A program made the translations under genes and the position numbers. Of a stretch of DNA of 64,000 bases, positions 1,916 to 64,000 are shown one piece after another. The DNA lies in the NCBI GenBank assembly GCA_002269645.1, contig NIVC01001104.1, positions 62,001 to 126,000 on the forward strand, in the 5' to 3' direction. The notes beneath the pieces are model-generated. The model ran no database searches. It was not told the DNA's origin and saw only the letters and a program-made list of their open reading frames with translations. The stretch is from Macrostomum lignano. Its lineage: Eukaryota. Every line of letters begins with the position of its first letter. Position 1 is the stretch's first letter.

Positions 1916-11787
<9,872 letters not shown>

Positions 11788-12367: not shown

Positions 12368-15056
12368 TCAGGTCCACAGGGTGCACCGCTTTGCAGGGTT
12401 GAAGGGTGAGCCGGGCTTGCAGCCGAACGCCTTGGCGAACTGCGGCATGTTGGACAGGCTGCCCAGGACCCTGTGCTCGTACACCGAGTGCACATCCGTT
12501 TCCATCAGCTTGCGGCCGAACTGCTTGGTCACGTGACCGCACCACAGCTGGGCGAAGGCCATGAAGAACACCTGGTCAGGTGTGTAGCCCAGTCCAGGCA
12601 GCAGCGAGGCGTCGGAGCTGGCAGTCTCTTGGTGCTTCTGGAACGCTCGATAAGCAACGTAGATCCCGCCATTGTCAGCCATGTTCTCTTCAACAGTGTG
12701 GGCGCCTCGGTTATTCATTCCGTAGGCTTTGTAGTTGCTGTACTGCTGCACGAAGCAGTCCCTGCGAGACCGGTACTGCATGCTGGTAGCGTTGCTCCAC
12801 CACTGCTGCAGGCAGCCTGTGGCGTTGTAGTATCGGCCTCTAGCGTCGAACGCGTGATTCAACTCGTGCCCCACGATGGAGCCGAGTGCTCCAAACAGGA
12901 ACGCGTCCTGGAAGTGCTCGTCGAAGAAGGGCGGCTGCAGGATGCCGGCAATGATGGTCATGCGCAGGGTGGTCTGGCTGTAGAACGCGTTGGCCATCAG
13001 CGGACTCTGGCCCCATTCGAATCTGTGGTGCGGCTGTCTGGAGCTCAGATGGTTGATCGACCATTTGCGCTTTGTGGCCCGGGCGTTCAGATATGACGCG
13101 AAGTAGTCGCCCTTGTCGATTTTGATGTCGTCGTAGAACTTGTCCAACTTGTGGGCGTTCATAATGATCTGAGGATAGCCAACAGTCTGCTTGATTCGGT
13201 CCACCTTGGCCAGGGCTCGAGTTCGGGTCTCCTTATCCATCCAGGGCGCTTCGCTGACAACCAGCCTGAGCTCCTTGTGGATGTGGTCAACTAGAGATGT
13301 CACCTTGGCCAGAGTCTTTGTCGTTATGGTGCGCTGCAGGACCAGAGCTCCGGTGAGGAACTTAAAGGCCAAGTCAGTCTTGCTGGTGCAGTACAGCCAC
13401 AGGTTGTCCAGCACGTTGTTGCCGTAGATGATCTGCTTCTCCTGACGCCGGGCCTCCTGGAACGGGTCGGAGAGGGCGTGCACGAACGAGCGCAGGGTGG
13501 TCATGACCGCGTAGTCGCTGAGCAGCATGGAGGCCGGAGACTTGGCGGCCATGGCCGGGGCGAACAACTCGGCCAGGCCAAGCAGGTATTCCAAGTTGTC
13601 AACTCGCATCAGGGTGGTTGGCTTGATCCGGACGCCCAGGAACTGAGGCGACAGGCGCACGGCCTCGGACACGAGCGACTCCGGGGTGACGGAGGCGTGA
13701 TGCAGCCTGTCGCTGATGTGCTTGCACAGGTCGGTTAAGGTCATCTCGAACCGGCTCGGGTCGGCAATTTTCGGCGCAACTTTTCGGCGCTCAACATAAG
13801 AGTTGCGCAGCCGCTCAAGGCGGACGTCCAGCTGCCAGAGCTCCTCGAGGCGCTTCCTGGACGCGTTGTTAACCGTGGAGCCGATCGCTTTGAGCACCTG
13901 TTCGCCGTAGGCCATGTAGGCTTTGTGAAACTTCTCGTCCGAAGTGACCAGCGCGCTGCGCTGGTAGGGCGCGAATCCCTGCGGTGAGACGGCGAGAATT
14001 TCACCATTAAAGCTACTTCTCACACATCTGGCCTAACTTCGGTCTGCTTCAACCAATCTCAATGATCTCTGTTTCATTTTAAAGCTGAATGAATTGATTT
14101 TGCCCGTCTCACATGAATATCGTAGATTTTTATCTGGCATAGGTTCTGACAAGGCTGATACAAATACTATGCAAACTCATTGTCAACTTCATTGAGGGGA
14201 CTAGGATATCTCTCTGGCGTATTTATTTGACTGGCCACAACCGTCTCCTTTGCAACTCCCGCACAATGACAGCTCGCGAACTCACCTGGTTGATGCGAAT
14301 CGCCCGTCGCCGATGATTGAAGTCGCTCACTGCCGGTTGGACGTTGAAAAATGGCTGCGCTAACAGCGCGTTGGCCTTGGCGATGCGCTCGATGATGCCA
14401 GCGTCTCCCGGATCGCTGCTGGGCGGTCGCGTGGCGGGCACGTCGTTGGTGAGCGACCAGCCGCCCAGACGGCTGATGAGCGACTCGGCGGACTTCTGGC
14501 CCAGGGCCTCGCGGGCGGTCGTGTTGCTGCAGGCTTCAAAGTAGGTGACCGCTTTGGCCGCGGCTTTGCTCCGATGGCCTCGAATGAGCAGCCGGTTGCT
14601 GTACCCGTGGCTGAGCAGCGAGTACAGCCGCAGCAGGTTGTCTCTCGTATCCTTGTAGAAGTTGGAGTACTTGCCGATGCCCGGCTGGGTGGGGTAGGCA
14701 TGGTCCCAGTTGCCGCAGGCGAACCCGTGAAAATCTTCGCACGGCTTCACAGCCCGGTCCACGGTGCGCAGCATGGAGGCCGACTGCAGCACGCAGTTAT
14801 CCGTGGAGCACAGCATCGCGCTGCTGCGCCATTTCACAATGGAAAAGCTGCCCAGAGCGATGAGGCCAGCCAGGGCCAGGAGCAGCAGCAATAGCAGCAC
14901 GAAGCCGCCGACGCTCAGACCGCAGACGGTGCTCGGCTTGTCTTTGTCCTTGTCATCGTCCTGCAGGCGGGTCCACTTGCCCGAGTCCGAGCCGCTTTCC
15001 TTGTAGGACTCGGCGGCCAGACGATCGCGGAGTTTCTCGTCCGGCTCCTGGTCCAT
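12368..15056 (-). CDS. M13 family metallopeptidase (neprilysin/endothelin-converting enzyme-like), type II membrane, 793 aa, 2 exons
   Basis: Exons 15056-14286 and 13978-12368 with a phase-0 GT-AG intron (NQ|GFAP). N-terminal transmembrane segment VGGFVLLLLLLLALAGLIAL, then PCEDFHGFACGNW, NAFY, zinc motif GHELNHAFD, EENMADNGG, DVHS and C-terminal CTLW. Confidence 0.95.
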
Positions 15057-23263: not shown

Positions 23264-25360
23264 TTAAGGGATAAACACTGTGGCGAAGTAATTCAACAGT
23301 AGCCAGTAGTACTTAATAGTGAACCATGGCACTTTTGTGTCCGAAGTGGCTGACGGCGGCAGCACACTCAGGTAGGCATTGGTGAATACGTATCCATACC
23401 TATTGCTGACATTGCACTGCACCACGAGCGAGTCTCTCACCGTGAGATTGCTAAACTGAAACTCACTGCCGACCGGGGAGAAGCGGCTGTCGGACCCGCT
23501 GACCGGTACACCGTTGATGAGCCACTTCGGGTCGCCGGGCGCGGCGCCAGCCTCGCAGCGGAACGTGTGGCTGCCGCCTTCGGGCACGGAGACGTCAGCT
23601 GGCTTCTGAATCCAGTAGGGCTCGCTGGCCACTCGTACGCGGTAGGTGCCGGCGTCGTTGAAGCCTCCCTCATTGGCGCCGGTGCACTGGTAAACACCTG
23701 CGGTTGCCGTGACAAAAGGGTTGGGGATTTTATGGCGACTCAATTTTATGGAGGTAGTTGTAGCGATTCTGGGTAAGGGCACTTGACTGGGCGATGGACC
23801 TGGGAGCAACTGCGAGAATCTGGCGGAGGCGCAATACTAAATGCACTGGCGATGGGACAAATAGGCGTTCCTTGCCGGCCTCCGGATGTTTTCTAAGAAA
23901 ATCGAGTGCAGTGTCTTGCTGCAGTAGTCCATGCTGAGGATTTGGGCTGGCGGGGCCCGGCACCTGACGATCTGGGAGGCTCGCCTAGTAACTGGGGATC
24001 TGGGAGGCTGGCCTAGTAACTGGGGATCTGGGAGGCTGGCCTAGTAACTGGGGATCTGGGAGGCTGGCCTAGTAACTGGGGATCTGAGAGGCTGGCCTAG
24101 TAACTGGGGATCTGGGAGGCTGGCCTAGTAACTGGGGATCTGGGAGGCTGGCCTAGTAACTGGGGATCTGAGAGGCTGGCCTAGTAACTGGGGATCTGGG
24201 AGGCTGGCCTAGTAACTGGGGATCTGGGAGGCTCGCCTAGTAACTGGGGATCTGAGAGGCTGGCCTAGTAACTGGGGATCTGGGAGGCTGGCCTAGTAAC
24301 TGGGGATCTGGGAGGCTGGCTTAGTAACTGGGGATCTGGGAGGCTGGCTTAGTAACTGGGGATCTGGGAGGCTAGCCTAGTAACTGGGGATCTGGGAGGC
24401 TGGCCCAGCAACCGAGGATCTGGGAGGCTGGCCCAGCAACTGAGGATCTGGGAGGCTGGCCCAGCAACCGAGGATCTGGGAGGCTGGCCCAGCAACCGAG
24501 GATCTGGGAGCGCTCCAGCTCGAGGATGGGGCAGCAGAGCTGGCCGCGGCGAGCTCACCAGCGTGATAATCCGGGTCAATATCGATGAGCCGCAGGCGGG
24601 CGCCAGAGTCCAGCAGTTGCAGCCGCTCCCCCGAAGAGACCTCAGTCGAATCCTTCTTCCACTGGATGCTGGGCGTCGGGAAGCCGGAGAAGAAGCAAAA
24701 CAAATCGAGAGTTCTGTTCGCGAGAGCAGTTATAAAAGAGGGTTTCTGCGCCATGAGCTGAGCAGCAGCCTATGTGATGCCTTTGATCACATCCAGCCGG
24801 TAGCTTCGACCTTGAACAGCCCGTCTAAGAATCCTGTTCTCCACGCTGCATCGGTAGGTTGCCTTGTCGGACAGGTGAATGTTAGAAAACAGCAGGTTGC
24901 CATTCACGGGGTCGATGTTGATTCGATTAGACCGTTGAATCACCATCGGCTGGGCGCCGTCCGCATCTGCAATCCGATGCCAGACTACCGGGGCGTCGGG
25001 GAAATTTATGGGCGGCACGCAGGGCAATGCCAGCCGACTTCCAAGCCGCCGCCGCACCGTGGCACTCGGCTCTTGAAGAAACTGGCCCAGCATGGCAGGG
25101 CGAAGGAACTGCAGGCATTGATTGGGAATTAGTTAGAGAATAAAAATGGGAATAATGAGAATATATAGTACGAAATCCTGGAAGGAATAACCTCGAGGAT
25201 CCTGGGATGATTAACCTGAGGATCTGATGGGATCGCTTACGGTTTACTTGTCGACCTATTAATGAAATTTCCAATTTTCCAAACTTACCGTTAGGTTCGA
25301 AGCGGCCACGCCCAGCTTATTCCCGGCCAGACACTGGTAAGATCCGTCGTCACGGACACG
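23264..25360 (-). pseudogene. L1/neuroglian (hemolin-like) Ig-domain gene: Ig1 tail plus Ig2-Ig4, 5'-truncated, with an internal TAG
   Basis: Exon remnant 25360-25289 (RVRDDGSYQCLAGNKLGVAASNLT, donor GTAAGT), exon 25108-24559 (LPCVPPINFPDAPVVW...NGNLLFSN; LDLFCFFSGFPTPSIQW) and exon 23697-23264 (GVYQC; EPYWIQKPAD...VVQCNVSNRYGYVFTNAYLSV). In-frame TAG at 24772-24770. The 5' part is replaced by retrotransposon sequence. Confidence 0.8.
23965..24515. repeat. 28-nt dispersed minisatellite family, locus 1 (GGATCTGGGAGGCTGGCCTAGTAACTGG)
   Basis: Tandem units in the Ig-gene intron. Same consensus as the arrays at 44.7, 48.0, 50.6 and 63.7 kb. Confidence 0.95.
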
Positions 25361-27224
25361 GACTATCGTGAATCTCCGGCCGTAGAGGAATTGATGGAAG
25401 CGGTGCAGCCCGAACATTATGGCCAGCGCTTCCTTGTCGAGCTGCGAGTAGCCCCGCTGTGCTGCGTTCAGGGTGCGGCTAGCGAATGCCACTGCGCAGT
25501 CTTTGTTGTTGATGCGATGGGACAACACCACACCCACTCCGTATAGTGAAGCGTCACACTCGAGCCGCAGCGGCATATCCGGGTTGAAGTGCACAAGCAC
25601 CGGTGAATGGAGCAGCAGACGCTTAGCTTCGCTGAAGGTGGTTTGCTGCGGCTTGTCCCACGTCCAGCGAACGTCCTTGGCCAGCAGCTGATTGAGCGGC
25701 GCTACTACGGTGGACAGGTTAGGCAGGAACCGGCCGTACTGAGTCAGCATGCCGAGGAACGAGCGCAGCTGGCTGATGTCCTTCGGCGCCGGGGCGTCTT
25801 GAATTGCGGCCACCCTGTCCGTCAGCGGGCTGAGTCCACATGCGTCAATGCGGTAGCCCAGATACTCGACAGAGTCCGTGAAGAACGGGCTCTTTTGCTT
25901 GTTCAGCCTGAGTCCCGACTCAAGGAGGCGCTGCAGAACTTCTTCCAGGTTTTTCTTATGTTGCTGCATCGTCTTGCTGGTGACCAGGATGTCATCGACA
26001 AACACCTGGACAGAGTCGAGACCTCCTAACAGAGTGTCCATCGTCCGTTGGAAGATCGCAGTGGCGCACTTGATGCCAAAAGGCATGCGATTGAACTGGT
26101 AGAGTCCCTTTGGCGTGTTGATCGTGACGAAGGCTTTGCTGACTTCGGCGAGCGGAAGCTGCAGGAAGGCATTGGACAGATCGAGCTTTGTCCACTTGCA
26201 GCCGCCTCCCAGCTTGGCAAACAGGTCCTCGATCTTGGGCAGAGGACCTGCCGCTGCCGCCGTTGCCGCTGCCGCCGTTGCCGCTGCCGCCGTTGCCGCA
26301 GCCGCCGTTGCCGCAGCCGCCGTTGCCGCTGCCACCGTTGCCGCAGCCGCCGTTGCCGCAGCCGCCGTTGCCGCAGCCGCCGTTGCCGCAGCCGCCGTTG
26401 CCGCAGCCGCCGTTGCCGCTGCCGCCGTTGCCGCAGCCGCCGTTGCCGCAGCCGCCGTTGCCGCAGCCGCCGTGGCCGCAGCCGCCGTTGCCGCAGCCGC
26501 CGTTGCCGCAGCCGCCGTTGCCGCAGCCGCCGTTGCCGCAGCCGCCGTTGCCGCTGCCGGGGTTGCCACCGCTGAACCGATTCCCTCTGTGGTGCGCTGA
26601 TGTCGCCTGCTTGCGGCTTCCTCTCTTGCCGAAAAATTGCAGATTGGCCGCAGACTGCGGTGTTGCCTTTTGTGCCATCTCCAGGGACGAATGCTCAGCT
26701 GACTCCAGCGACATCGCCTTCTCTTGCAGGGATTCGAAGGTCGGCTCAACCACTTCCAGCAGCTTGGCTCGGAAGGCGTCACTTCGAAGGCCGAACACAA
26801 GTTGGTCTCGGAGCCGCTCATTTAGCGACACACTGAAGTTGCAGTCAGCTGACAGAGCCTGGAGCCCCGCGATGAATGCAGTGAAGCTCTCGCCTGCTTG
26901 CTGAGTTCGTTGTTGGAAACGGAACCTCGCAGCCAGCTCCGAAAGCTTTGGTGCAAAGTGTGTTGTCAGCAGCTTCCTCAGGTCAGCGTAAGACTTCTGC
27001 GGCACTTGGCCTGTCTGGCACAGCCTCAACAGTGTGATGTAAGCCTCCTCTCAGATCGACGTGATCCTTATATAATGAAGTGTTCCTACCTTGGATCAGA
27101 GTAACCACATTTGCCTCATCCTTCACCTCTTTGCAGATGAAGTACTGCTCGAGACGCTCAAGGAAGACCTCTCGACGTTGGTAGATGGTAGTAGTTGGCC
27201 CAGCATGGGCAGACTCGTCGCCAT
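25361..27224 (-). mobile_element. Defective Gypsy/Ty3 (Mag-like) retrotransposon, copy A internal region (PBS, gag, RT, truncated RNaseH)
   Basis: PBS TGGCGACGAG at 27223-27214. Gag ERLEQYF...LRDQLVFGL; RT PLPKIEDLF...MPFGIK...VFVDDILV; RNaseH LECDASLYGVG...LDKEALA...RRFTIV. Zinc knuckle, protease and RT N-terminus are absent. Identity with copy B ends at 25361. Confidence 0.93.
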
Positions 27225-28415
27225 TGTATGTGTGTCAGACTGCTCTAGTGTGTGTCAGACTACTCTAGTGTGTGTCAGACTGCTCTAGTGTGTGTCAGAC
27301 TGCTCTAGTGTGTGTCAGACTGCTCTAGTGTGTGTCAGACTGCTCTAGTGTGTGTCAGACTGCTCTAGTGTGTGTCAGAGTGCTCTAGTGTGTGTCAGAC
27401 TGCTCTAGTGGTTGTCAGACTGCTCTAGTGGTTGTCAGACTGCTCTAGTGTGTGTCAGACTGCTCTAGTGGTTGTCAGACTGCTCTAGTGGTTGTCAGAC
27501 TGCTCTAGTGTGTGTCAGACTGCTCTAGTGAATGTCAGACTGCTCTAGTGTGTGTCAGACTGCTCTAGTGTGTGTCAGACTGCTCTAGTGGTTGTCAGAC
27601 TGCTCTAGTGTGTGTCAGACTGCTCTAGTGTTTGTCAGACTGCTCTAGTGTGTGTCAGACTGCTCTAGTGTGTGTCAGACTGCTCTAGTGTGTGTCAGAC
27701 TGCTCTAGTGTGTGTCAGACTGCTCTAGTGGTTGTCAGACTGCTCTAGTGTGTGTCAGACTGCTCTAGTGTGTGTCAGACTGCTCTAGTGGTTGTCAGAC
27801 TGCTCTAGTGTGTGTCAGACTGCTCTAGTGTTTGTCAGACTGCTCTAGTGGTTGTCAGACTGCTATCATAAGGATTGGACTGTTCTAACAAACTCAAGAA
27901 GTTTAAATCCAGGCTTTTCCAATATGGGTCAGCTATAATTTCAGTGTGGGTCAGACTGTACTAATGTCTGTGTTAAAAACTCACCAGAGAAGGCACACTG
28001 CACTAAAGCCGCCAGACTCAAAGCTAGAAGCGCCAACCTCATGCTGTAACTGGGGAATTAGAAATAACTCAATACTGTGTCAGAGTACTAGAATTTGATC
28101 AATAAACTCCGAAGTAGTCAGCGAGGATCAACGATTCAAGGTGCCAATTTTATTAATATACTTTTTGCGATATCTTTAATATTGTAACTGAGGCAGTAGT
28201 GTATAATTGCAGGAGTGAGAAAGGCTGAGAGCTAGGCTGACAATACTTATTAGTTAGCAATGAGGTGGTGGCTGCAGACAAATTCAAGCGTGCGCATGGG
28301 GTGGGTGTTGAATACAATACCATTCAAATCATTAAGCTGGTCAATAGCAATCGCCGTGAGTCAACACTTCAGTGCATGCAACCCATAACAAAGTTCAACG
28401 TGTCACGATGTCACA
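27225..28415 (-). mobile_element. LTR (1191 bp) shared between the two tandem Gypsy copies
   Basis: TG...CA termini. On the minus strand it is preceded by PPT AAGGGGGGAGG at 28416-28426 and followed by the PBS at 27223. AATAAA on the minus strand near 28150. Contains a 20-nt array (GTGTGTCAGACTGCTCTAGT) at about 27230-27865. Confidence 0.88.
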
Positions 28416-30405
28416 CCTCCCCCCTTAGTTAACGCCCTCACTGCAGCATCAATCTGTCAGGTGGTGCTCGAACTCGATTCGGGTAGCGCCGGGATACTCG
28501 TTAGCAGCGTCAGCAGTGTCTGCCTGCGGCGAGGCCGACGTGCCGCCAGCGTCAGGTGCCGCGCAGTCCTCGGCCGGGGCTGTGCTGCTGTTCGATTCGG
28601 CCAACCCAGCGGGAGCCGACAGCAGCTGGTCAGCGTGTCGCGCTTGTACGCCGCGTCCGGAATCGACTGTGCAGTTGCGAGTGCCGGCATTGACAATGAC
28701 ACCTTCGGCCCAGCGACTGCTTTCTCCTGCACGAGCAGCAGTGCTGAAATCGCGGTAGAGCACGCGATCTCCAGGCTGGAACTGGCGCACTGGCCGCTGC
28801 TGCTGAAGCTGATGTCGCTGTTGCGTGGCCGAAGTCAACGATGGTGTCAGGAGATCCAGCCGGCTGCGCAGCTGGCGGCCAATGAGCAGCTGACTCGGCG
28901 CGGTGCCACTGACGCTGTGCGGAGTGTTGCGGTAGGCCATCAGCAGTCGTTGAAGTTGCTCATCGGGGTGACCGCACTTACTCAAATGCCGCTTCAGCAC
29001 CTGGACGAAGCGCTCGGCCTGGCCATTGGTCGCCGGGTGGAATGACGCCGAGAAGATGTGCCGGATGCCGTTGGAACTGACGAACTCAGCGAACTCGGCC
29101 GAAGCGAATTGTGGCCCGTTGTCCGACACCAAGCTTCTCGGTAGGCCGAGACGAGCGAAGATTTCTCCCAGGCAGCTGATCGTCGCAGTTGCAGTGGTGC
29201 TGCTCATCCTGTGCACCTCTGGCCACTTGCTGTGCGCGTCGACCAGGACCAGGTAAGTGCGGCCTTCCACGGGTCCCGCGAAGTCGATGTGCAACCGCTC
29301 CCATGGCTCAGTCGGGAATGGCCATGGCTGCACCGGGGCCTTGGATGGATCCGCCTGATTGAGCTGGCAGGTGCGACAGGCTTTTACTGCGGCCTCCAGG
29401 TCTTTGTCAATACTTGGCCACCAGACGTAGCTTCTCGCGAGGGCGCGCATGCGGCTGATGCCAGGGTGGGCTTGGTGCGGCTCGTTCAACACTTGTTATC
29501 GCAGGGCGGCTGGCACCACAACTCGAACGCCCCACAGCACGCAGCCCTGGTCAATGGACAGCTCGCTCTGGCGCCTGGCGAAGTCGGTCAGGTCGGCGCA
29601 GATAGTCGAACCCGTCTGCGGGCAGCGCAGCACGCGACCTAGCACCGCATCCGTCCTGGTGAGCCGCGCCACCGTCGCTGCAGTGGCGGCCGAACCTGCG
29701 CCCTCGTCCATCAGCAGCGAGTTAACCGCTGTCTCCTCCTCGAACTGCTGCGGCAATGGCAGCCGGGACAGCGAGTCGCAGTTGGCGTGCTTCTCCGTCG
29801 GCCGAAACTCGAGCGCATAGTCATAGCTCGCCAGCCGGATCGCCCACCGCTGCATGCGGGCTGCAGCGTGTGCCGGGATGCCTTTCCGCTCGCCCAGTAA
29901 CCCGAGTAGCGGCAGGTGATCAGTGACTATCGTGAATCTCCGGCCGTAGAGGAATTGATGGAAGCGGTGCAGCCCGAACATTATGGCCAGCGCTTCCTTG
30001 TCGAGCTGCGAGTAGCCCCGCTGTGCTGCGTTCAGGGTGCGGCTAGCGAATGCCACTGCGCAGTCTTTGTTGTTGATGCGATGGGACAACACCACACCCA
30101 CTCCGTATAGTGAAGCGTCACACTCGAGCCGCAGCGGCATATCCGGGTTGAAGTGCACAAGCACCGGTGAATGGAGCAGCAGACGCTTAGCTTCGCTGAA
30201 GGTGGTTTGCTGCGGCTTGTCCCACGTCCAGCGAACGTCCTTGGCCAGCAGCTGATTGAGCGGCACCACTACGGTGGACAGGTTAGGCAGGAACCGGCCG
30301 TACTGAGTCAGCATGCCGAGGAACGAGCGCAGCTGGCTGATGTCCTTCGGCGCCGGGGCGTCTTGAATTGCGGCCACCCTGTCCGTCAGCGGGCTGAGTC
30401 CACAT

Positions 30406-33400
30406 CCCAGTGGCAAAGCCGAGCTCGGTCCGAGCTCGGGCCGACGTCGGCCACTCGGCATTCGATCGGCCATACTAAAGTCGGCCAGCCGACGTCGGCC
30501 CGAACTCGGTAGAACCTCGGGGTGCCGCGCCGTTAACCGATTAAAAGTTTTAATCAATTAAGCAGAATTTACCTACGCTAATGAATTCGATATGATTAAA
30601 AAAGAACACCGCATAAATATAGATGAATAATTTACACTGAAAAAGTGACTCTTTTGCAATAAACAAAAACAACGCAATAATACAGCACTTTTGAACCACC
30701 AAAGTGGTGTAATGTGCTTTTTACACATACTAATTGTGTTTTTACTGAATTAGTTTCCTCGTTGAGTAGGTGATTTGACTTTTATGGATTTATTCTCCTT
30801 CGAGACGACCATGAAGTGCATGCGTTATAGGTACGGAAAATTCGAAGTACTGGATTTTAACAATTATATATATGAGTAATTTACCAGATAAAAAGAACAT
30901 AGCTTCGTTAGTAAAAATATAAATAAATAATTAACTGCTTTAGAATTTACTTAAGGCGTAATTATTGCTCATTTTTTGCCATTCATTTGAATATATTGCT
31001 CCCGTGCAGGTCAAGCCAATTGTAAACAGTGTTTGGCTCTTTTTAACGTGGCAATTCATTTAGCTTCTTAGTTATTATTTTTATTACACGTTCTTTGGAA
31101 GCATTTAGATGTTTCGGCAAAAATTCCAGAGACATACTTAGTCTTACAGTTAAGCCGTAACTAATTGAACTATAGCTACACTGTAATGCAATGTAAACTT
31201 GTTTTTTGGGGTTTAATGAAGATTTGCTTACAATTTATGAATAGGCGTATGAAATATGTTTTCATTAATGATAATTAGACATATTACGATGGCAATTCAC
31301 CAGCTATTTTCAGAATGGCCATCAAATAGTTATCTAGGAGTTAAAAGTGAATAAATATCTACAAAAAGCATATTTTCATGATAAAATGTTGAAAAGTATA
31401 GGATTGCAATAGGAGTTACCATAACTTAACTGTAGGAATGATATCTAGCTTAGGTCATAAATCCTGTGATTTGAAAAGTCTAAAATGGCCTAAATAAAGC
31501 CAGATTTTTAGGCTCCTATGATATTTTTATCCCTACTATATTAGGTCTAGCTTCTTATTTTTTATTTGTCTATGGCAATGCCATCATGAATTATATACAA
31601 TCAGTTAATTTAAGACATTGTTTATGTACTATAGGCCAGGATATAATGCCAATTGTGCATTTTATGGCAGGCAATTTAATGTAATTTTGCTATATATGCC
31701 AATTTTTTACTCTTTTGAATAGATTCATAGTATTCAGTTTATACTATATTGTTTTTCTAATGACTTTTTAGTATAACTATAGTATACTTATTTTACTATT
31801 ATAGGTTTTTACTTTATTTTTGCACCATAGACTAGATATTGATGCTATTTTTATATACTAGGGCCCTATGCCATATTTGGCATCAGTTTTGCACTGCAAA
31901 GTTTTGCACATCAATTTTTTTACTTTTTCATCATATGGCTTCAATTCTAACCCCCTTGATGTTCTAGATACAACACTTTGAGAAAATGGGGCGAGATTCT
32001 AAGCCTCCCCACGAGCGATCCAGAAGCAGCAGCACGACACCCATGCCCATGACCACCACATTGAGATGGGCAACGCAGTCGTTGCGAGGGACTTTGCTGC
32101 TGATGGCAGCTGGAAGCCTGCTGTTCTGACCGACTGCTCCAGGGCTGTGTCTCTCTTGCCAGTTTGACGATGGTCGAGAGGTCCATCGGCAGATCAATCA
32201 AGTGTCTGCGCGGCGCCTTCCAAAGTTGAGCAACCGCTATGTGCCGAGGTGCCTGACGATCAACCAGAGGCCCCTGCGGAGACGCCTGGCCAGGCGCCAG
32301 AGTTGAGCTCTGCGGCGCCACTTTGACGTTCGACCAGGGCAAGAGCTTAACCTGACCGGCTGCGCTACCAGTGACTATGGACTGTTCCTCTATGGACTGT
32401 GAACTGATTTGCGTCTTTTATTCCCGTTTTTATCTAACGCTTAATCTTTGTGGGGAGGAGTGTGGTGACTTGACTGAGCAAATTGTTGTTTGTTTTGTTA
32501 GCTTGTTTTTACTCCGTGTTTTGAGGTGGTGTTTTACCAGTTTCGCTGCGTGCTCCCTTCTGCGATATTTCGCTGTACATTCTTATGTACGCTCTGGATT
32601 CTGGCCGCTCTTGCTCTCCACCCTTAAGCCTCTTACACCCAATGTATCGTGCTCAATATTTACAATATAAATTGCAGTCGCTTTCCTCGTATCAAGCGTC
32701 TCGTTCTACAATCTAAAGTGAAGTCTTTACAGTTTATAATGTTAATAAATGCTCAACCAAATCCGTATCGCAACCCTTAACTCAACCTCTGTTTTCAGCT
32801 GTTTAGCTACTTTTTCTCTTTGTTTTCTTGCTTATTGGTTGAAAAGTTAATCTTGTATCATTATTAGCATTTGATAATACACTAGTGTGCTTGTGGTGGA
32901 TTTACTGTTGCGGTTTTCTTTTAATTCAATTATTTTAACTTCTAAATCGTTGTCTTATTTCACAATCATTTAATCCTGAACATGGTTGTTGGTTGTATAT
33001 TTGTTGGGTCAGAGAACTGAGTCTGGTGGATATGTATCTAATTCCGAGGGGAAATCAATTAACTAGTTATACTAGAGGCTCACCATAACTAGGCTCATAT
33101 ACGAGCGTACATTAACACTGCAATGCACTAACATGCTAGGAATGACATGGGATCTTTAACTCGATGGTTTCAATTCGTGTCATGTCATTTTCCCATTCAC
33201 CTTTTCTTTTTCATGTAATACCGAATTGTACATGTACAGTAAAATTATATAGAAAGTGAAAGTGGCACCTACATGTAGTCAATCTGCAAGAAGCAATATA
33301 AGCTTTATAATAAGCTAAATAAAGTATAGTGCAAAGCTACTCGGCATTACCGCGGTCAGCCGACCTCGGCCCGAGGTCGTCGGCCCGAGCTAGAACCGCC

Positions 33401-33468
33401 GTCAACCCGCCGAGCTCGGCCCGATCTCGGCGGACCGAGCTCGGGCCGAGCTCGGCTTTGCCACTGGG
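30406..33468. mobile_element. Non-autonomous CMC/EnSpm-like DNA transposon, 3063 bp, inserted in the Gypsy RT
   Basis: TIRs CCCAGTGGCAAAGCCGAGCTCGG / CCGAGCTCGGCTTTGCCACTGGG with subterminal CCGAGCTCGG palindromes. 2-bp TSD AT (30404-30405, 33469-33470). The empty site GAGTCCACATGCGTC is visible in copy A at about 25833-25847. No transposase ORF. The superfamily is inferred from the CCC termini plus 2-bp TSD. Confidence 0.88.
31960..32710 (+). mobile_element. Decayed 3' end of a second Gypsy element (integrase C-terminus, PPT, 250-bp LTR)
   Basis: Frameshifted QKQQHDTHAHDHHIEMGNAVVARDF...WKPAV / CQFDDGREVHRQINQV resembles Mag-type integrase tails. PPT GGGGAGGAG at 32452-32460, then TGTGGTGAC...TTCTACA at 32461-32710. 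Confidence 0.7.
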
Positions 33469-35558
33469 ATGCGTCAATGCGGTAGCCCAGATACTCGACA
33501 GAGTCCGTGAAGAACGGGCTCTTTTGCTTTTTCAGCCTGAGTCCCGACTCAAGGAGGCGCTGCAGAACTTCTTCCAGGTTTTTCTTATGTTGCTGCATCG
33601 TCTTGCTGGTGACCAGGATGTCATCGACAAACACCTGGACAGAGTCGAGACCTCCTAACAGAGTGTCCATCGTCCGTTGGAAGATCGCAGTGGCGCACTT
33701 GATGCCAAAAGGCATGCGATTGAACTGGTAGAGTCCCTTTGGCGTGTTGATCGTGACGAAGGCTTTGCTGACTTCGGCGAGCGGAAGCTGCAGGAAGGCA
33801 TTGGACAGATCGAGCTTTGTCCACTTGCAGCCGCCTCCCAGCTTGGCAAACAGGTCCTCGATCTTGGGCAGAGGACCTGCCGCTGCCGCCGATGCCGCTG
33901 CCGCCGATACCGCTGCCGCCGTTGCCGCAGCCGCCGTTGCCGCAGCCGCCGTTGCCGCAGCCGCCGTTGCCGCTGCCGCCGTTGCCGCTGCCGGGGTTGC
34001 CACCGCTGAACCGATGCCCTCTGTGGTGCGCTGATGTCGCCTGCTTGCGGCTTTCTCTCTTGCCGAAAAATTGCAGATTGGCCGCAGACTGCGGTGTTGC
34101 CTTTTGTGCCATCTCCAGGGACGAACGCTCAGCTGACTCCAGCGACATCGCCTTCTCTTGCAGGGATTCGAAGGTCGGCTCAACCACTTCCAGCAGCTTG
34201 GCTCGGAAGGCGTCACTTCGAAGGCCGAACACAAGTTGGTCTCGAAGCCGCTCATTTAGCGACACACTGAAGTTGCAGTCAGCTGACAGAGCCTGGAGCC
34301 CCGCGATGAATGCAGTGAAGCTCTCGCCTGCTTGCTGAGTTCGTTGTTGGAAACGGAACCTCGCAGCCAGCTCCGAAAGCTTTGGTGCAAAGTGCGTTGT
34401 CAGCAGCTTCCTCAGGTCAGCGTAAGACTTCTGCGCCACTTGGCCTGGCTGGCACAGCCTCCACAGTGTGATGTAACCCTCCTCTCAGATCGACGTGATC
34501 CTTATATAATGAAGTGTTCCTACCTTGGATCAGAGTAACCACATTTGTCTCATCCTTCACCTCTTTGCAGATGAAGTACTGCTCGAGACGCTCAAGGAAG
34601 ACCTCTCGACGTTGGTAGATGGTAGTAGTTGGCCCAGCATGGGCGGACTCGTCGCCATTGTATGTGTGTCAGACTGCTCTAGTGTGTGTCAGACTACTCT
34701 AGTGTGTGTCAGACTGCTCTAGTGTGTGTCAGACTGCTCTAGTGTGTGTCAGACTGCTCTAGTGGTTGTCAGACTGCTCTAGTGTGTGTCAGACTGCTCT
34801 AGTGTGTGTCAGACTGCTCTAGTGGTTGTCAGACTGCTATCATAAGGATTGGACTGTTCTAACAAACTCAAGAAGTTTAAATCCAGGCTTTTCCAATATG
34901 GTCAGCTAAAGTTTCAGTTGTGGGTCAGACTGTACTTATGTCTGTGTTAAAAACTCACCAGAGAAGGCACACTGCACTAAAGCAGCCAGACTCAAAGCTA
35001 GAAGCGCCAACCTCGTGCTGTACCTGGGGAATTAGAAATAACTCAATTCTGTGTCAGAGTACGCAGTATTGAGTTGCAGACTGTTGTAATTAAAAGTTGT
35101 TGATTCGAATATCACCAGATTCGTCAGGCATCTTAAATAATTTGAAATTTATTCCAGGCACGAATGCGCACGATATAACTGTAGATAGAAGATTAAATAT
35201 TTCAGAAAACATCATTATTTACCTTTCAGAATATGGACTTGCTGACCTACTAATTTATCTAAAACAATTAATACAATTAATAATGGCAGCGCTAGTAGGG
35301 CAGAGCGATTCGGCGCGCGCAATGTCGATTTAGCCTGTCAGCTGATGTCGCTGACGGCGCAATAGGTCGCTTTTGGACAAACCATGCATCAGCCCGTTCA
35401 AGGACTATACACCTCTGAGAATAGTGGATTGGTCCACCATAGGGGCCTAATCTCGGGCCGCCACCTCAAGTTTTGGTCCCTATGGGAGTCTCCGGTGGGC
35501 TAACCATTCGGCGGGGTTCGGATGCCTTCATAGGTGATTGCGTGTCCTAACTGCGAAA

Positions 35559-35858
35559 GGGGGTTGTAGCCTAGTGGTTACGGTAGAGCATCGGACTCAA
35601 GATTTGAAAGTCGGAGGTTCGATTCCCAAAGCCACTGGAACAATTTGTCCTTGAGCAAGACACTAACTCTGCACTGCTTCGATTCACCATGCTGTAAAAT
35701 GGGTGTCAGCATTTGCTGGGGTAATTGAGGGTGTGGCGACCCCCGAACAGCCGCACACTGTCTTCAGATGCACCGTGCAATACATGTAGCTGCGGCTGAG
35801 CTGTCGGTTGCACACCTGGTGCAACTATATGGCAGGTGTAATCAATTATCATTATTTT
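35559..35858 (+). mobile_element. tRNA-derived SINE (CORE-like central domain), copy 1
   Basis: A-box TAGCCTAGTGG and B-box GGTTCGATTCC; central GTCCTTGAGCAAGACACT...TGTAAAATGGG; tail GGCAGGTGTAATCAATTATCATT. Homologous to 49545-49845. Confidence 0.85.
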
Positions 35859-37817: not shown

Positions 37818-39445
37818 TCAGCTCTGCTTCGGGCCCTGAAGCTTCTGTCGAACATCTTCGGGTATGGCCTCGACGCAGCGCTGATGATCTTCCACCCGCA
37901 TCGCCGCCAGGACGCCGCGGTTGTTCGGCCGTTCAACTCCGGGATCGTAGCGCAGCTGCCGACCGAAGATGTCGGTCAAGCGACCGCCGGCTGCGCGCAG
38001 CAACGCCTCCGGAGCGCAGGTGTCCCACTTCTTGCAGCCGGCCGAGGCGAAGATGTACACGTGAGCCCGCCGCTCCAGCAGCAGCAGCACCTTGTGGCCG
38101 CAGCCTCCGACTCGGAGGGTCTGGGTTTTATAGATGGCGACGGAGGGATAGGTAGGCAGAGGGTAATACTGGAGACAGCGGAGAGGGTAGCCCACACCGG
38201 GCAAAGGGTAACACACAGAGGGCAAAGGGTAACACACAGAGGGCAAAGGGTAACACAGAGGGCAAAGGGTAACACACAGAGGGCAAAGGGTAACACACAG
38301 AGGGTAAAGGGTAACACAGAGGGCAAAGGGTAACACACACAGAGGGCAAAGGGTAACACACACAGAGGGCAAAGGGTAACACACACAGAGGGCAAAGGGT
38401 AACACACACAGAGGGCAAAGGGTAACACACACAGAGGGCAAAGGGTAACACACAGAGGGCAAAGGGTAACACACAGAGGGCAAAGGGTAACACACACAGA
38501 GGGCAAAGGGTGACACACACAGAGGGCAAAGGGTAACACACAGAGGACAGAGGAGAGCCTAACACACAGTGCTGAGGAGACACTGATTGCAGTACTACCT
38601 GAGTAGGACCGCAGGCAGTCACGGCGGCCGTGACAGTATCGCTGTCGTGACTGCGCGTGGTGACAACTACGCGACCAGTGGGCAGAGGCCGGCGCGAGTC
38701 CGAGCCCATGCCGAAGATGCCCAGACCGTCCAGGCCCCAGACCAGCCGGCCAGCCTGACTGGGGTCGGTTAGGTAGCGATAATAAGGCTGGTACACCACC
38801 CCGGCAACAGCTTGACCTTCCAGTGCCACTCCAATCAGCACGGTGACATTGTCGAGTAGATTGTCGGCAAATTCCGATGTGCCATCGAGTGGATCGACCC
38901 AGACTGTTAGATCTTCGGGTCGAACGTTTTGTACTTTTTCGGGGCATCTGCAGTACACAGAGGGTGGGTTGGTTTTTATGTATTTCTTTTAGTTGGTTAT
39001 TTAGTTAGTCAGTTAAGTTAGTCATTCAGTTAGTTAGTTAATTAGTTAGTTAGTCATTCATTAGTTAGTTAGTTAGTTAGGTAGTTAGTTAGTTAGTCCC
39101 CCTAAGTCCAGAAATGCCACGAGTCTCAGCCCTGGCACACCTGTGACACTGCTGCAGCACTTCGTCCAGCGGTTCAACGATCTCATCAGGGCCAAGCGGC
39201 GCCGCTGCAGGGTCCTCCTCCTCCTCGCCGATGACGGTCAGGCCAGGGAAGGCGGCCCGCAGGTTGGCCGTGATGAGCCGCTGGGCGCCTCGATCTGCCT
39301 GCGTCTGCAGATCATTGTGGCCCTTGATGACAATGCCGAGCTCGCCACTGCGCATCACCTCGCGGACATAGGCGCCAGCGCGCACCGCGGCAGATGCTGA
39401 GCAGGCTAGCAGGCGCATTAGCAGTGGCGCAGCTGGAGATGGCAT
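37818..39445 (-). CDS. BPNT1: 3'(2'),5'-bisphosphate nucleotidase 1, 318 aa, 3 exons
   Basis: Exons 39445-39141, 38947-38599, 38120-37818 (957 nt, GT-AG). Motifs DLQTQADR, VIGEE, VWVDPLDGT, VTVLIG, VTTRSH, LRVGGCGHKV and GCKKWDTCAPEALLRAAGGRLTDIFG. Confidence 0.96.
38198..38545. repeat. About 20-24-nt minisatellite (AGAGGGCAAAGGGTAACACAC), BPNT1 intron 2
   Basis: Tandem units are visible. Confidence 0.95.
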
Positions 39446-42400: not shown

Positions 42401-44229
42401 ATAACAACTGCCTTTAAAAAAACAATAAATAAAAATGATTTCCTGAATACTGGGCTTTATGCAATGCAACCAACCTCTTTAGCCTTATCCCAATAATTTC
42501 ATATTGTAGCATCAAATACACAACACAATTTAGATAAGCTAGGACCTAGGCCTAATTGGGTAGACAAATGCAAATGATCCCAATTGCAGCACATAGGCAT
42601 TTTGGTAAGCAGTATCTAGCATAGATCAGCCTGGCATAGTGCGGCGTGGCATGGCACCCAAGGTGAAATTCATTTAGGTAAAACAAATAATGCATTTTGT
42701 ATAAAAAGTAAAAAAATATATGTACATTATATGTAAAACTTCATCAAAATTTTTCTTTGCAATAAAGGAGCTTCAGTAAATTAATATTGGTGCTAGTGTT
42801 ATCTTTGTGTACATTTAAATCCAATGATATATATAATTTTCTGGCAAAAAAATCTACTATTATGTGTGCCTTTCTTGGTGAATTTTTTTTGTTCTGCGCA
42901 CTTGATTTATAAAGTATATCTTGGCATGGTGCAATGTGGCAAAGTGATAAGAGGCAGCAAAAGGTGCAATGTAGTATGGTGAAGCAGTGGGATGTAGACA
43001 AAACAATGTATATGTACATTATAATGTGTTTTTTCTATATAAAAAAATCTGCCTTGTGTGCCTTCCCCCTAAATCTCCCACTGGGTGCAATATGGCAAAG
43101 TGAAGTGCTTCTCTACCTATCTAAAATCTTTATTTAGGTGCCATTGCGGCACAGTTAGGGTAGGTGTCTGGGGCATCTGGCACCTAAGCCATGCACTATA
43201 ATAAGGCAAAAGATTAACATTACTATATCTAGACCTAATGCAAAAGGCTATGAAGAAGTTAGGGCCTATGACAAGTTTATGCCAAAATCTAGAGCTAGTG
43301 TCAAAGAGATTCAAAATATTTTGTCCTAGATAATTGCCACTGAAAACCTTATAAAAAAGAAACTTTGATTTCAACCAATAATACTGAGTTTTATTGTATA
43401 AAATTATAGTATTTGTCTATAATTAGAACATTAGAATTAGCTAAAAACTAGATCAAAAAGAGTGATTGACATGACATGATAAAATATGTGTTAATTATAA
43501 ACGTTAAAAGTTGGCAAAAATACTCAAACTATCATCTCACTCTTTATAACTACAAAAATATAGACCTATAAACATATTGAACAATTGTACTAATCAGCAA
43601 ATTATCTATCTAGTTCATCTAAAATACCAATCATAAATATTATCAAAATCTAGAATAGGCTAGGCCTAGGCCTAATAAGTATTTAGCAGTGCATAAGTGG
43701 TATAAGGACGATTTTATTTTAGTTCTATAATACTTTAGCTTTTTGCATTGTGCATAAAAGTGTACAAAGTGAGTGTCCTATATTTAGTATATTCAGTAGA
43801 TCTTATCTTTATTTTATTGTCTATATGTAAATTCTAGAGTAATATATATATTTATGGATCATACTTAAATAGCAATGCTAAAAGTATAAAGCTGGAATAA
43901 AATTATCAAATTTCATTTTTAATCCTAGTAAATTCTCATTTTTGTTAGGCCTACCTTTAGCCTTAAGCTTTAGATTTCTTTATTCTATATCCAATGCGTG
44001 GGTTTCTTAATGCAAATGAGAAATTTGGAGTCTCAACTGACTCTGCTGCTTTATAATTGACCTTGGCAAGACTCAAATGGGCAATTAACTTGGCTTGAGT
44101 CCCTTAGGAAAATTTTGTATAACAGAGGTCTTATAATTAGATCTAGAAAAATAAATAAGCAGATATACAGTATTCCGAAAGAATCAATAAGAACTGCATA
44201 ATATCCTCCCAATCGCGCACATATTGCAG

Positions 44230-48009: not shown

Positions 48010-48350
48010 GGATCTTGGAAGCCAGCCTCCCAGATCCTTAGTTGCTGGGCCAGCCTTACAGAGTGTCAGTTGCTGGGCCAGCCTCCCAGATCCTTAGTTG
48101 CTGGGCCAGCCTCCCAGATCCTCAGTTGCTGAGCCAGGCTCCCAGATCCCCAGTTGCTGGGCCAGCCTTCCAGATCCCCAGTTGCTGGGCCAGCCTCCCA
48201 GAGTGTCAGTTGCTGGGCCAGCCTCCCGGATACTCAGTTGCTGGGCCAGCCTCCCAGATACTCAGTTGCTGGGCCAGCCTCCCAGATACTCAGTTGTTGG
48301 GCCAGCCTCCCAGATCCCCAGTAGCTGGGCCAGGCTCCCAGATCCCCACT
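48010..48350. repeat. 28-nt family locus 3
   Basis: CAGTTGCTGGGCCAGCCTCCCAGA units, intergenic. Confidence 0.95.
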
Positions 48351-49544: not shown

Positions 49545-49845
49545 AATGATAATTGATAAAACCTGCCCCAATTGGGCCAGATGTGCAACTGACAGCTCAG
49601 CCGCAGCCATTGCGCGGCGCATCTGAAGGCTGCGTACGGCTGTTCAGTCCAAGTACTGGGGGGTCGCCACACACAGTCTCAATTACCCCAGCTAATGCTG
49701 GCACCCATTTTACAGTTGGGTGAACTGAAGCAATGCAGAGTAAGTGTCTTGCTCAAGGACACAAATTGTTCCGAGTGGGTCGGGAATCGAACCCCCGACC
49801 TTTCAATCGTAATTCCGACGCTCTAATCACTGGGCTATAACCCCC
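49545..49845 (-). mobile_element. tRNA-derived SINE, copy 2
   Basis: The reverse complement aligns by eye to 35559-35858 (GGTTCGATTCCCG, GTCCTTGAGCAAGACACT, TGTAAAATGGG, GCGGCTGAGCTGTC). Confidence 0.85.
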
Positions 49846-63651: not shown

Positions 63652-63699
63652 GTGAGCGGCTGATGACGGAGCAGCTGGGACCATCTGGGACAGCGTCAG

Positions 63700-64000
63700 A
63701 CTTAGAAACTGGGAGTCTGGGAGGCCGGCCCAGCACTGGGGATCTGGGAGGCTGACCCAGCAACTGAGGATCTGAGAGGCTGGCCCAGCAACTGAGGATC
63801 TGAGAGGCTGGCCCAGCAACTGAGGATCTGAGAGGCTGGCCCAGCAACTGAGGATCTGAGAGGCTGGCCCAGCAACTGAGGATCTGAGAGGCTGGCCCAG
63901 CAACTGAGGATCTGAGAGGCTGGCCCAGCAACTGAGGATCTGAGAGGCTGGCCCAGCAACTGAGGATCTGAGAGGCTGGCCCAGCAGCTGAGGATCTGGG
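63700..64000. repeat. 28-nt family locus 5, GSK3 intron 2
   Basis: GAGGATCTGAGAGGCTGGCCCAGCAACT units running off the window end. Confidence 0.95.

What the first reader, a model, noticed from the sequence alone, without database searches (positions are those of the whole stretch)
25259..28415. In-frame fusion of a Gypsy RT-RNaseH to an Ig cell-adhesion gene, downstream of an intact LTR
Seen: identity with the other retro copy stops at 25361 (GACTATCGTG vs 29925). The pol frame continues without a stop into RVRDDGSYQCLAGNKLGVAASNLT, the C-terminal strands of an Ig domain, ending at a GTAAGT donor (25288) whose phase matches the Ig2 exon acceptor (25109). A real ATG at 26821 opens this frame: poly-Ala linker, RT (FVDD), RNaseH, Ig1 tail, Ig2. 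There is no LTR or TSD at the junction, so this is a recombination/deletion joint rather than a normal insertion. Inference: the complete LTR (27225-28415) could drive a spliced RT-RNaseH-Ig chimera, a snapshot of retroelement-host gene fusion. The RT lacks its N-terminal subdomains and the RNaseH lacks its last Asp, so enzymatic activity is unlikely.
Basis: partly seen in the sequence, partly recalled or inferred. Interest (0 to 1): 0.8.

Follow-up and report, generated by a model that had tools for sequence, protein, structure and literature searches.

The report
Dead retrotransposon fused to broken neuroglian-like gene
A defective gypsy-type retrotransposon fragment really does abut, in frame, the tail of the first Ig domain of a neuroglian/L1-like adhesion gene. 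However, the supposed intact LTR upstream contains that gene's own signal-peptide exon and the gene is otherwise wrecked, so this looks like ordinary genomic debris rather than a new fusion gene.

Summary
The junction is real in the assembly. Copy A of a gypsy-type element matches copy B perfectly up to 25361. The next base starts the last 24 codons of Ig1 of a neuroglian/L1-type gene, in frame. The GTAAGT donor and Ig2 acceptor are confirmed by gap-free alignment to a 1413-aa relative (P0135).

The interpretation mostly fails:
- The "intact LTR" (27225-28415) does have PPT/TG and CA/PBS edges. Inside it, though, lies the Ig gene's own exon 1 (signal peptide MRLALLALSLAALVQCAFS, then GTGAGT), the best match in the whole window to P0135's signal peptide.
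- That exon-1 block, a 20-bp minisatellite and the retroelement form a 1.7-unit tandem array, cut off at both ends.
- Both element copies are dead: gag is frameshifted, and protease plus the RT N-terminus are replaced by a 15-bp minisatellite.
- The ORF's ATG (26821) lies out of frame in gag, behind six upstream ATGs.
- The Ig gene lacks about 72 codons of Ig1, carries a TAG at a conserved Tyr codon, and has no exons beyond Ig4.

An in-frame joint has a 1-in-3 prior. Most likely this is a deletion scar in a decaying locus. Interest is low.

The parts
25259..26821 (-). It comprises out-of-frame gag, poly-Ala/Thr from the 15-bp repeat, partial RT, partial RNase H, 24 Ig1 codons and 9 intron codons.
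25289..25360 (-). Remnant of the Ig1 exon (last 24 codons, RVRDDGSYQC...NLT) of a neuroglian/L1-type gene. Donor GT at 25288-25287.
   Evidence: P0135 residues 92-113, 77% identity
25361..26248 (-). Element copy A: RT (Pfam RVT_1 positions 58-205) and the first three quarters of RNase H, ending abruptly at 25361.
26249..26567 (-). 15-bp minisatellite (21.3 copies) at the site of an internal deletion. The deletion removed the gag C-terminus, protease and RT N-terminus (residues 196-532 of the L003 relative).
26568..27212 (-). gag remnant of copy A, readable only across at least two frameshifts that copy B shares.
27213..27223 (-). Primer-binding site TGGCGACGAGT. Its first 10 bases, TGGCGACGAG, are also the first 10 of the 11-nt PBS next to the LTR in the relative L003.
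27229..27864 (-). 20-bp minisatellite (31.8 copies, unit CACTAGAGCAGTCTGACACA) between exon 1 and the PBS. Degenerate units also flank exon 1.
27985..28042 (-). Exon 1 of the Ig gene: ATG, 19 signal-peptide codons and 1 nt, followed by the GTGAGT donor (phase 1).
28089..28415 (-). LTR 5' portion (starts TGTGACA, contains TATATTAATAAA), unique in the window. The PPT lies at 28416-28426 just upstream.
28449..30405 (-). Element copy B: complete RNase H and integrase, contiguous open frame, 46% identical to the L003 relative.
30406..33468 (.). 3,063-bp non-autonomous DNA transposon with terminal inverted repeats, inserted into the RT of copy B. Absent from copy A.
33469..34662 (-). Copy B RT, 15-bp repeat (8.3 copies), gag and PBS.
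34663..35062 (-). Second copy of the exon-1 block (start codon mutated to ACG) plus the 20-bp repeat (8.8 copies). Homology with copy A starts sharply at 35062 = 28088.
24559..25108 (-). Ig2, linker and first half of Ig3 as one exon, with an in-frame TAG (24772-24770) where the relative has Tyr.
23333..23697 (-). Second half of Ig3 plus Ig4. This is the last part of the gene detectable in the window.

Best explanation
The region is a decayed 5' fragment of a neuroglian/L1-type Ig adhesion gene, entangled with a dead Ty3/gypsy element. It is not an LTR-driven fusion gene.

Most likely history (inferred):
1. A non-autonomous gypsy copy came to lie in intron 1, just downstream of the signal-peptide exon and an intronic 20-bp minisatellite. 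It begins exactly at its PBS and has no 5' LTR. That is consistent with end-joining capture of an incompletely reverse-transcribed cDNA, or with a later deletion.
2. The unit [exon-1 block, minisatellite, PBS-gag-RT-RNaseH-IN-PPT, first 327 bp of the 3' LTR] was tandemly duplicated. The joint is at 28089|28088.
3. A DNA transposon landed in the distal copy (B).
4. In the proximal copy (A), a deletion ran from mid-RNase H to the middle of the Ig1 exon. It removed the rest of the element, the rest of intron 1 and about 72 Ig1 codons. This created the 25361|25360 joint, which happens to be in frame.

The 520-codon ORF is an accidental by-product of joining two recently functional coding sequences.

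Shown: the anatomy, the homologies and the lesions. Inferred: the order and mechanism of events, and the lack of function.
For: Exon 1 inside the 'LTR':
- The signal peptide of the 52%-identical relative P0135 finds its best match among all 127,888 six-frame positions of the window at 28042(-). The score is 38, z about 5.5, and the runner-up is the duplicate at 35016.
- The match has the same length (19 codons plus 1 nt) and is followed by GTGAGT.
- It sits on the right strand, 2.6 kb upstream of the Ig1 tail.
- No other exon-1 candidate lies between it and the next upstream gene at 38128-39445.

Tandem unit:
- The copy A / copy B homology blocks are collinear from 28088/35062 to 25361/29925.
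- The 327-bp LTR stub has no second copy in the window.

Dead element:
- The PBS is verified against relative L003.
- Residues 196-532 of the relative's polyprotein are missing in both copies.
- gag is frameshifted. RVT_1 is matched only from position 58, and RNase H only to position 76 of 105 in copy A.

Broken gene:
- P0135 residues 20-91 and 425-1413 find nothing on the minus strand.
- A TAG aligns to Tyr within an otherwise contiguous exon.
- Unrelated genes box the locus in.

Translation is unlikely: six upstream ATGs precede 26821, and the same ORF start exists in copy B.

Precedent for insertion of LTR-retrotransposon replication intermediates at breaks: PMC11372161.
Against: - The outer edges of 28415-27225 look like a true LTR (PPT/TG at one end, CA/PBS at the other).
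- The 13 nt at the start of the shared block (GTACTCTGACACA) resemble the minisatellite unit. They would also give a 6/7 terminal inverted repeat with TGTGACA. So part or all of the block could be element-derived, which is the LTR-with-captured-exon rival.
- A/B divergence is not uniform: exon-1 block 4.0%, gag 1.7%, RT/RNase H about 0.3%. A single simple duplication does not predict this; gene conversion would have to be invoked.
- Apart from the TAG, the Ig2-Ig4 exons keep all hallmark Cys/Trp residues and have no frameshifts. Decay is therefore recent, or the TAG is an error or a polymorphism.
- No reads, RNA data or second genome copy were available.
Confidence: 0.6

Rival explanations
1. 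28415-27225 is a genuine 1.19-kb LTR of this element family that has incorporated the host gene's first exon and a piece of intron into its U5 region, between the old LTR terminus and the PBS. The array LTR(truncated)-B-LTR-A arose by unequal exchange between LTRs. Both ends were then truncated, the right one into the Ig1 exon.
For: - Canonical edges: PPT then TG at 28416/28415, and CA-A-PBS at 27225-27213, with the PBS confirmed in relative L003.
- The sequence CTAGTACTCTGACACA that spans the stub/block boundary resembles the minisatellite unit and gives a 6/7 inverted repeat with the LTR start.
- LTR-part divergence (4%) is higher than internal divergence (0.3%), as expected if the LTRs are older than the internal duplication.
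- Anything inserted between R and the PBS would be copied into both LTRs at the next transposition (established reverse-transcription mechanism).
Against: - It needs a rare exon capture and then, by coincidence, residence next to the very gene the exon came from; or an in-situ origin plus loss of the native exon 1. None is found upstream.
- Copy B's 5' LTR would have to be truncated within 13 nt of the stub/exon-block boundary.
- U5 would be about 900 nt, whereas the stub alone has normal LTR proportions.
- gag divergence (1.7-2.6% at its 5' end) does not fit a clean LTR-versus-internal split.
Confidence: 0.25
2. The joint at 25361/25360, and possibly the 28089/28088 joint, is an assembly artefact in a region dense with near-identical repeats and minisatellites. 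The real Ig1 exon is intact in the organism.
For: - The joint coincides exactly with the end of a 99.6%-identical repeat.
- The window is saturated with tandem arrays that trouble assemblers.
Against: - A false join normally needs sequence shared by the two true loci. No homology between the element beyond GTC and the Ig1 tail is visible.
- The independent lesions of the gene (TAG, missing downstream exons) fit a truly degenerate locus.
Confidence: 0.1
3. One reading: the LTR (or the exon-1 promoter) drives a transcript whose 520-codon ORF is translated and spliced into an RT-RNaseH-Ig1tail-Ig2 chimeric protein, an incipient element-host fusion gene.
For: - There is an uninterrupted ORF from 26821 across the joint to a consensus donor whose phase matches the Ig2 acceptor.
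- A TATA-like TATATTAA lies in the stub.
Against: - Its first ~190 residues are out-of-frame gag plus repeat-encoded poly-Ala/Thr.
- RT and RNase H are truncated. A third of an Ig domain cannot fold.
- The product would stop at the TAG after Ig2.
- Six upstream ATGs and a strong donor precede the start codon.
- The ORF is explained by the youth of its parts and a 1/3 chance of frame match.
Confidence: 0.04

Closest known systems
Ty3/gypsy LTR retrotransposons annotated 'K02A2.6-like' (for example the element in L003, ENA ERZ25878340)
   Same: RT-RNaseH-IN order. The integrase has H2C2 and rve domains and is 45-51% identical to many such proteins. Its PBS matches the relative's in the first 10 of 11 bases (TGGCGACGAG), and its PPT directly precedes a TG-initial LTR.
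   Different: It is non-autonomous: about 337 residues (gag C-terminus, protease, RT N-terminus) are replaced by a 15-bp minisatellite, and gag is frameshifted. There is no canonical 5' LTR and no target-site duplication. It is arranged as a 1.7-unit tandem array with a host exon inside each unit.
Neuroglian / L1CAM / contactin family of Ig cell-adhesion molecules
   Same: The Ig1 tail through Ig4 align colinearly to contactin-5, contactin-2 and neurofascin structures (E 1e-35) and at 52-61% identity to P0135. The signal peptide is homologous to P0135's.
   Different: Only the signal peptide, the last third of Ig1, and Ig2-Ig4 are present. There is a nonsense codon in the Ig2-Ig3 linker. No Ig5-6, FN3, transmembrane or cytoplasmic exons are found in the 23 kb downstream.
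Insertion of LTR-retrotransposon cDNA intermediates at double-strand breaks (yeast Ty1; PMC11372161)
   Same: An element fragment that begins at the PBS, lacks a 5' LTR, has no target-site duplication and ends inside or at the 3' LTR is what a captured replication intermediate would look like.
   Different: The precedent is in yeast with mostly short inserts. Here it is only inferred from anatomy, and a later deletion of the 5' LTR is an alternative.
Domesticated element-host fusion genes (for example SETMAR, recalled from the literature, not tested here)
   Same: An element-derived coding sequence is joined in frame to host exons through a host splice site.
   Different: Known cases have intact, conserved, expressed ORFs with foldable domains. 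Here both partners are truncated within domains and there is no evidence of conservation or expression.

Membership tests
Ty3/gypsy LTR retrotransposon | pol domain order RT - RNase H - integrase | tested here: met
   Pfam RVT_1, RT_RNaseH(_2), Integrase_H2C2 and rve occur in that order on the minus strand. Colinear with the L003 polyprotein.
Ty3/gypsy LTR retrotransposon | PBS next to the 5' LTR and PPT next to the 3' LTR | tested here: met
   PPT AAGGGGGGAGG is followed by TGTGACA. The PBS TGGCGACGAGT matches the L003 PBS TGGCGACGAGG.
Ty3/gypsy LTR retrotransposon | Two matching LTRs flanking one internal region, with a target-site duplication | tested here: not met
   The LTR start (28089-28415) has no second copy. 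The shared 'LTR' part contains a host exon. Both array ends are non-LTR joints, so no target-site duplication is possible.
Ty3/gypsy LTR retrotransposon | Intact gag, protease and RT (autonomy) | tested here: not met
   Relative's residues 196-532 are absent. RVT_1 is matched only from position 58. gag is frameshifted.
Neuroglian/L1-type IgCAM gene | Signal peptide followed by a four-Ig horseshoe (Ig1-Ig4) homologous to L1/contactin | tested here: inconclusive
   The signal peptide, Ig1 tail and Ig2-Ig4 are present and colinear. The first ~72 Ig1 codons are absent.
Neuroglian/L1-type IgCAM gene | Ig5-Ig6, FN3 repeats, transmembrane and cytoplasmic domains | tested here: not met
   tblastn of P0135 residues 425-1413 finds nothing on the minus strand of the window. 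An M13 peptidase gene follows 8 kb downstream.
Functional element-host chimeric (domesticated) gene | ORF made of complete, foldable domains with a usable start codon | tested here: not met
   The N-terminal ~190 residues are out-of-frame gag and repeat. RT, RNase H and Ig1 are all truncated. Six upstream ATGs precede the start, and a TAG follows Ig2.
Functional element-host chimeric (domesticated) gene | Transcription across the joint, and conservation or purifying selection | not testable with these tools
   No reads, RNA-seq or second genome of this species are available. No identical or near-identical proteins are in the databases.

The most novel reading that the evidence does not exclude
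The 1.19-kb block is a working LTR that has captured a host signal-peptide exon, with its splice donor, into U5. That would make the element a mobile carrier of a first exon able to splice into downstream genes. The RT-RNaseH-Ig ORF would then be a side effect of one such copy recombining with its source gene.
Probability: 0.2. Interest if true: 0.5.

Novelty: new member of a known kind. Interest (0 to 1): 0.2.

Why it matters
Mainly as an annotation caution. An ORF that joins RT/RNase H to Ig domains, sitting behind something with LTR-like edges, would be called a chimeric gene by automatic pipelines. Comparison with one full-length relative shows that the 'LTR' hides the host gene's own first exon and that the locus is a rearranged, disrupted gene remnant.

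If the minority reading is right (an LTR that has captured a first exon), it would be a natural example of an LTR element carrying a portable signal-peptide exon. That would be of some interest for exon shuffling.

Tried and rejected
- Looking for the missing Ig1 N-terminal half and downstream exons. phmmer with the window's own Ig domains against all six-frame segments and tblastn with P0135 found only an unrelated Ig gene on the plus strand (6076-7437).
- Looking for other copies of the element or LTR. Word-indexed protein searches gave no hit above 55% identity except a 74% partial one. Exact-pattern scans of metagenome contigs for the stub/exon-block junction and for a gag motif returned nothing. 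The LTR-versus-host question could therefore not be settled by copy comparison.
- Testing whether copy B's upstream flank is a diverged LTR stub. The Smith-Waterman score was below the shuffle mean, so this was rejected.
- tRNA and Rfam scans of the window found nothing.
- A 33-nt mini-intron that would remove the TAG at 24772-24770 was considered and rejected. P0135 aligns straight through that stretch with matching length.
- Exon 1 splicing directly to the Ig2 acceptor was considered and rejected, because phase 1 meets phase 0 and the frame breaks.
- The first Ig query in the word-indexed database gave only one weak hit. The exhaustive representative search was needed to find P0135.


Full report
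**Setting.** Everything relevant lies on the minus strand. The window is eukaryotic (metazoan), gene-dense and extraordinarily rich in minisatellites. The locus is boxed in by unrelated genes:
- an inositol-monophosphatase-family gene at 38128-39445 (-);
- an M13 peptidase at 12368-15056 (-);
- further out, ORC5-like, methyltransferase and kinase genes.

**Observation check.** A self-comparison shows two copies of one retroelement.
- Copy A runs 25361-28088. Copy B occupies 29925-30405 and 33469-35062, and is split by a 3,063-bp insertion.
- At the 3' end of copy A the alignment with copy B is perfect up to ...TTCACGATAGTC (25361) and then falls to noise.
- The ORF 25259-26821 (520 aa) reads through this point into RVRDDGSYQCLAGNKLGVAASNLT.
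- Pfam finds RVT_1 (profile positions 58-205 only), RT_RNaseH_2 and RT_RNaseH (positions 2-76 of 105) in this ORF. Copy B has the full RNase H and an integrase.
- The tail is a true Ig1 end. The concatenated Ig exons align colinearly to contactin-5 residues 71-382 and to contactin-2 and neurofascin (E about 1e-35).
- The exon ends at 25289 and the donor GT is at 25288. The acceptor AG is at 25110-25109 and the next exon starts at 25108. A relative aligns across the splice without a gap.
- So the reported junction, frame, donor and acceptor are all there. The frame match itself has a 1/3 prior.

**The Ig gene.**
- The word-indexed protein search found almost nothing. The exhaustive search found P0135: 1413 aa, 52% identical, carried by two transcript-like Logan contigs.
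- P0135 is a full neuroglian/L1-type molecule. Its nearest named relatives are tick neuroglian and mollusc L1-like/NRCAM proteins.
- tblastn of P0135 against the window gives three matches:
  - residues 92-113 to 25351-25286;
  - residues 114-305 to 25105-24530, as one uninterrupted exon;
  - residues 295-424 to 23701-23333.
- Nothing matches residues 20-91 (first two thirds of Ig1) or residues 425-1413 (Ig5-6, FN3 repeats, membrane anchor, tail) anywhere on the minus strand.
- Within the Ig2-Ig3 linker the window has TAG (24772-24770) where P0135 has Tyr. Residues on both sides are conserved and the length is the same, so this is a nonsense codon, not a mini-intron.
- Ig2-Ig4 otherwise keep their Cys/Trp hallmarks. 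The damage is therefore recent, or partly error or polymorphism.

**The 'LTR' contains the gene's own exon 1.**
- P0135 begins MRLILATLLMAALLQYANT. I scored this 19-mer against all 127,888 six-frame positions of the window. The top hit is MRLALLALSLAALVQCAFS at 28042(-): score 38, with background mean -17.9 and sd 10.1. The second hit is its duplicate at 35016(-), whose ATG has become ACG. The best unrelated hit scores 30.
- The window ORF has the same length as the signal-peptide segment of the P0135 mRNA (19 codons plus 1 nt). It is followed by GTGAGT, giving a phase-1 exon end.
- It lies on the same strand, 2.6 kb upstream of the Ig1 tail. No other candidate exists up to the next gene.

**Anatomy of the retroelement.**
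- After the integrase stop (28451-28449) comes the PPT AAGGGGGGAGG (28426-28416), then TGTGACA... (28415), a proper 3'-LTR start.
- Only 28415-28089 (327 bp, containing TATATTAATAAA) is unique. It has no second copy in the window, and copy B's upstream flank is unrelated to it.
- From 28088 the sequence is shared with copy B (35062 onward). In order it holds 46 nt of leader, exon 1, about 120 nt, a 20-bp minisatellite (31.8 copies in A, 8.8 in B), then ...ACA-A-TGGCGACGAGT.
- That last motif is a genuine PBS. In a related element (L003; integrase 50% identical, 152-bp LTRs) the 5' LTR ends ...ACATGACA, followed by ATTT and TGGCGACGAGG.
- Compared with the L003 polyprotein, both window copies lack residues 196-532 (gag C-terminus, protease, RT N-terminus). 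A 15-bp minisatellite sits in their place. gag needs at least two frameshifts to be read.
- The element was therefore dead before the two copies diverged.
- The ATG at 26821 lies in a non-gag frame. The same ORF start exists in copy B (33356-34255). Six ATGs, including exon 1's, precede it downstream of the stub's TATA.

**Architecture.** Read 5' to 3' on the minus strand:
- unrelated flank;
- [exon-1 block, 20-bp repeat, PBS-gag-RT(+DNA transposon)-RNaseH-IN-PPT, LTR stub];
- [exon-1 block, 20-bp repeat, PBS-gag-RT-RNaseH(partial)];
- Ig1 tail, intron, Ig2...

This is a 1.7-unit tandem array whose two ends (35062 and 25361) are both non-canonical joints.

**Most likely history (inferred).**
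- An LTR-less, PBS-initial element piece lay in intron 1. It got there either by end-joining capture of a replication intermediate, as documented for Ty1 cDNA at breaks (PMC11372161), or by later loss of the 5' LTR.
- The exon-1-plus-element unit was tandemly duplicated. The joint is at 28089|28088, with GTA/GTAC microhomology.
- A DNA transposon hit copy B.
- A deletion from mid-RNase H of copy A to mid-Ig1 exon produced the reported joint.
- I put about 0.5-0.6 on this.

**Main structural rival (about 0.25).**
- In this reading 28415-27225 is a real LTR that has captured exon 1 into U5, and the array arose by LTR-LTR unequal exchange.
- In its favour:
  - the canonical PPT/TG and CA/PBS edges;
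  - the resemblance of CTAGTACTCTGACACA at the stub/block boundary to the minisatellite unit, and to an inverted copy of the LTR start;
  - higher divergence in the exon-1 block (4.0%) than in RT/RNase H (about 0.3%).
- Against it:
  - the improbable adjacency of a captured exon to its source gene, or else loss of the native exon 1;
  - truncation of copy B's LTR within 13 nt of the stub/block boundary;
  - a U5 of about 900 nt;
  - an intermediate gag divergence (1.7%) that fits neither model cleanly.
- Copies of the element elsewhere in the genome would settle this. None could be reached.

**Function.** A functional chimera is very unlikely under any of these histories.
- The ORF's first ~190 residues are out-of-frame gag and repeat-encoded Ala/Thr.
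- The RT lacks its N-terminal third. RNase H stops just before the conserved TDH motif and so lacks the last two of its four catalytic carboxylates. This rests on the known DEDD motif, read from the copy A / copy B comparison.
- Twenty-four residues of Ig1 cannot fold, and the spliced product would end at the TAG after Ig2.
- Exon 1 (phase 1) cannot be spliced in frame to Ig2 (phase 0).
- ORF integrity is explained by the youth of the pieces (A versus B 0.3% in RT/RNase H) and a one-in-three chance of frame match.
- Misassembly of the joint cannot be excluded without reads (about 0.1).

**Verdict.** The sequence observation is real. The 'intact LTR driving a spliced RT-RNaseH-Ig chimera' is not supported. 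This is an ordinary, if intricate, example of retroelement-associated rearrangement and pseudogenisation at the 5' end of a neuroglian-like gene.

Noticed in passing
window 30406-33468: A 3,063-bp AT-rich insertion in the RT of copy B. It has 44-nt terminal inverted repeats (93% complementary, CCCAGTGGCAAAGCCGAGCTCGG...) and an apparent 2-bp AT duplication of a CATG target. No transposase ORF is evident, so it is probably a non-autonomous DNA transposon.
   Followed up: partly
window 23969-24510, 44751-45143, 48021-48348, 50586-51053, 63683-64000: One 28-bp minisatellite family (unit about GATCTGGGAGGCTGGCCTAGTAACTGGG) recurs in both orientations. It appears in an intron of the Ig gene, inside the ORC5-like ORF and at three other sites, which suggests a dispersed, possibly mobile, repeat carrier.
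   Followed up: no
window 6076-7437 (+): A second, unrelated Ig-domain gene on the opposite strand (Pfam Ig_3/I-set hits). Its exons are separated by a 45-bp-type minisatellite array.
   Followed up: partly
window 12368-15056 (-): An M13 (neprilysin/ECE-like) peptidase gene in two large exons, immediately downstream of the truncated Ig gene. Its position shows the Ig gene has no room for its 3' two thirds.
   Followed up: partly
window 44224-45903 (+): A 559-codon ORF with AAA_16 and ORC5_C domains. It reads straight through a 28-bp minisatellite array as GEFPRSSVAG repeats, which is either an intron or a repeat expansion inside an ORC5-like gene.
   Followed up: no
window 35540-35720 (-) and 49545-49825: A tRNA-like/SINE-like sequence upstream of copy B, with a 79%-identical inverted copy 14 kb away. 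ARAGORN and Rfam call nothing there.
   Followed up: no
window 25361-28088 vs 29925-35062: Divergence between the two tandem units rises steadily along the unit: RNase H/RT about 0.3%, gag 1.7%, exon-1 block 4.0%. A simple duplication does not explain this. Gene conversion or a composite origin is possible.
   Followed up: partly
L003 6435-6586 and 10905-11056: A related gypsy element in an ENA assembly has 152-bp LTRs (99% identical) and an 11-nt PBS that shares its first 10 bases (TGGCGACGAG) with the window element's (last base G vs T). It has an intact gag-PR-RT ORF of 775 aa followed by a 592-aa RNaseH-IN ORF, and is useful as a reference for this clade.
   Followed up: partly
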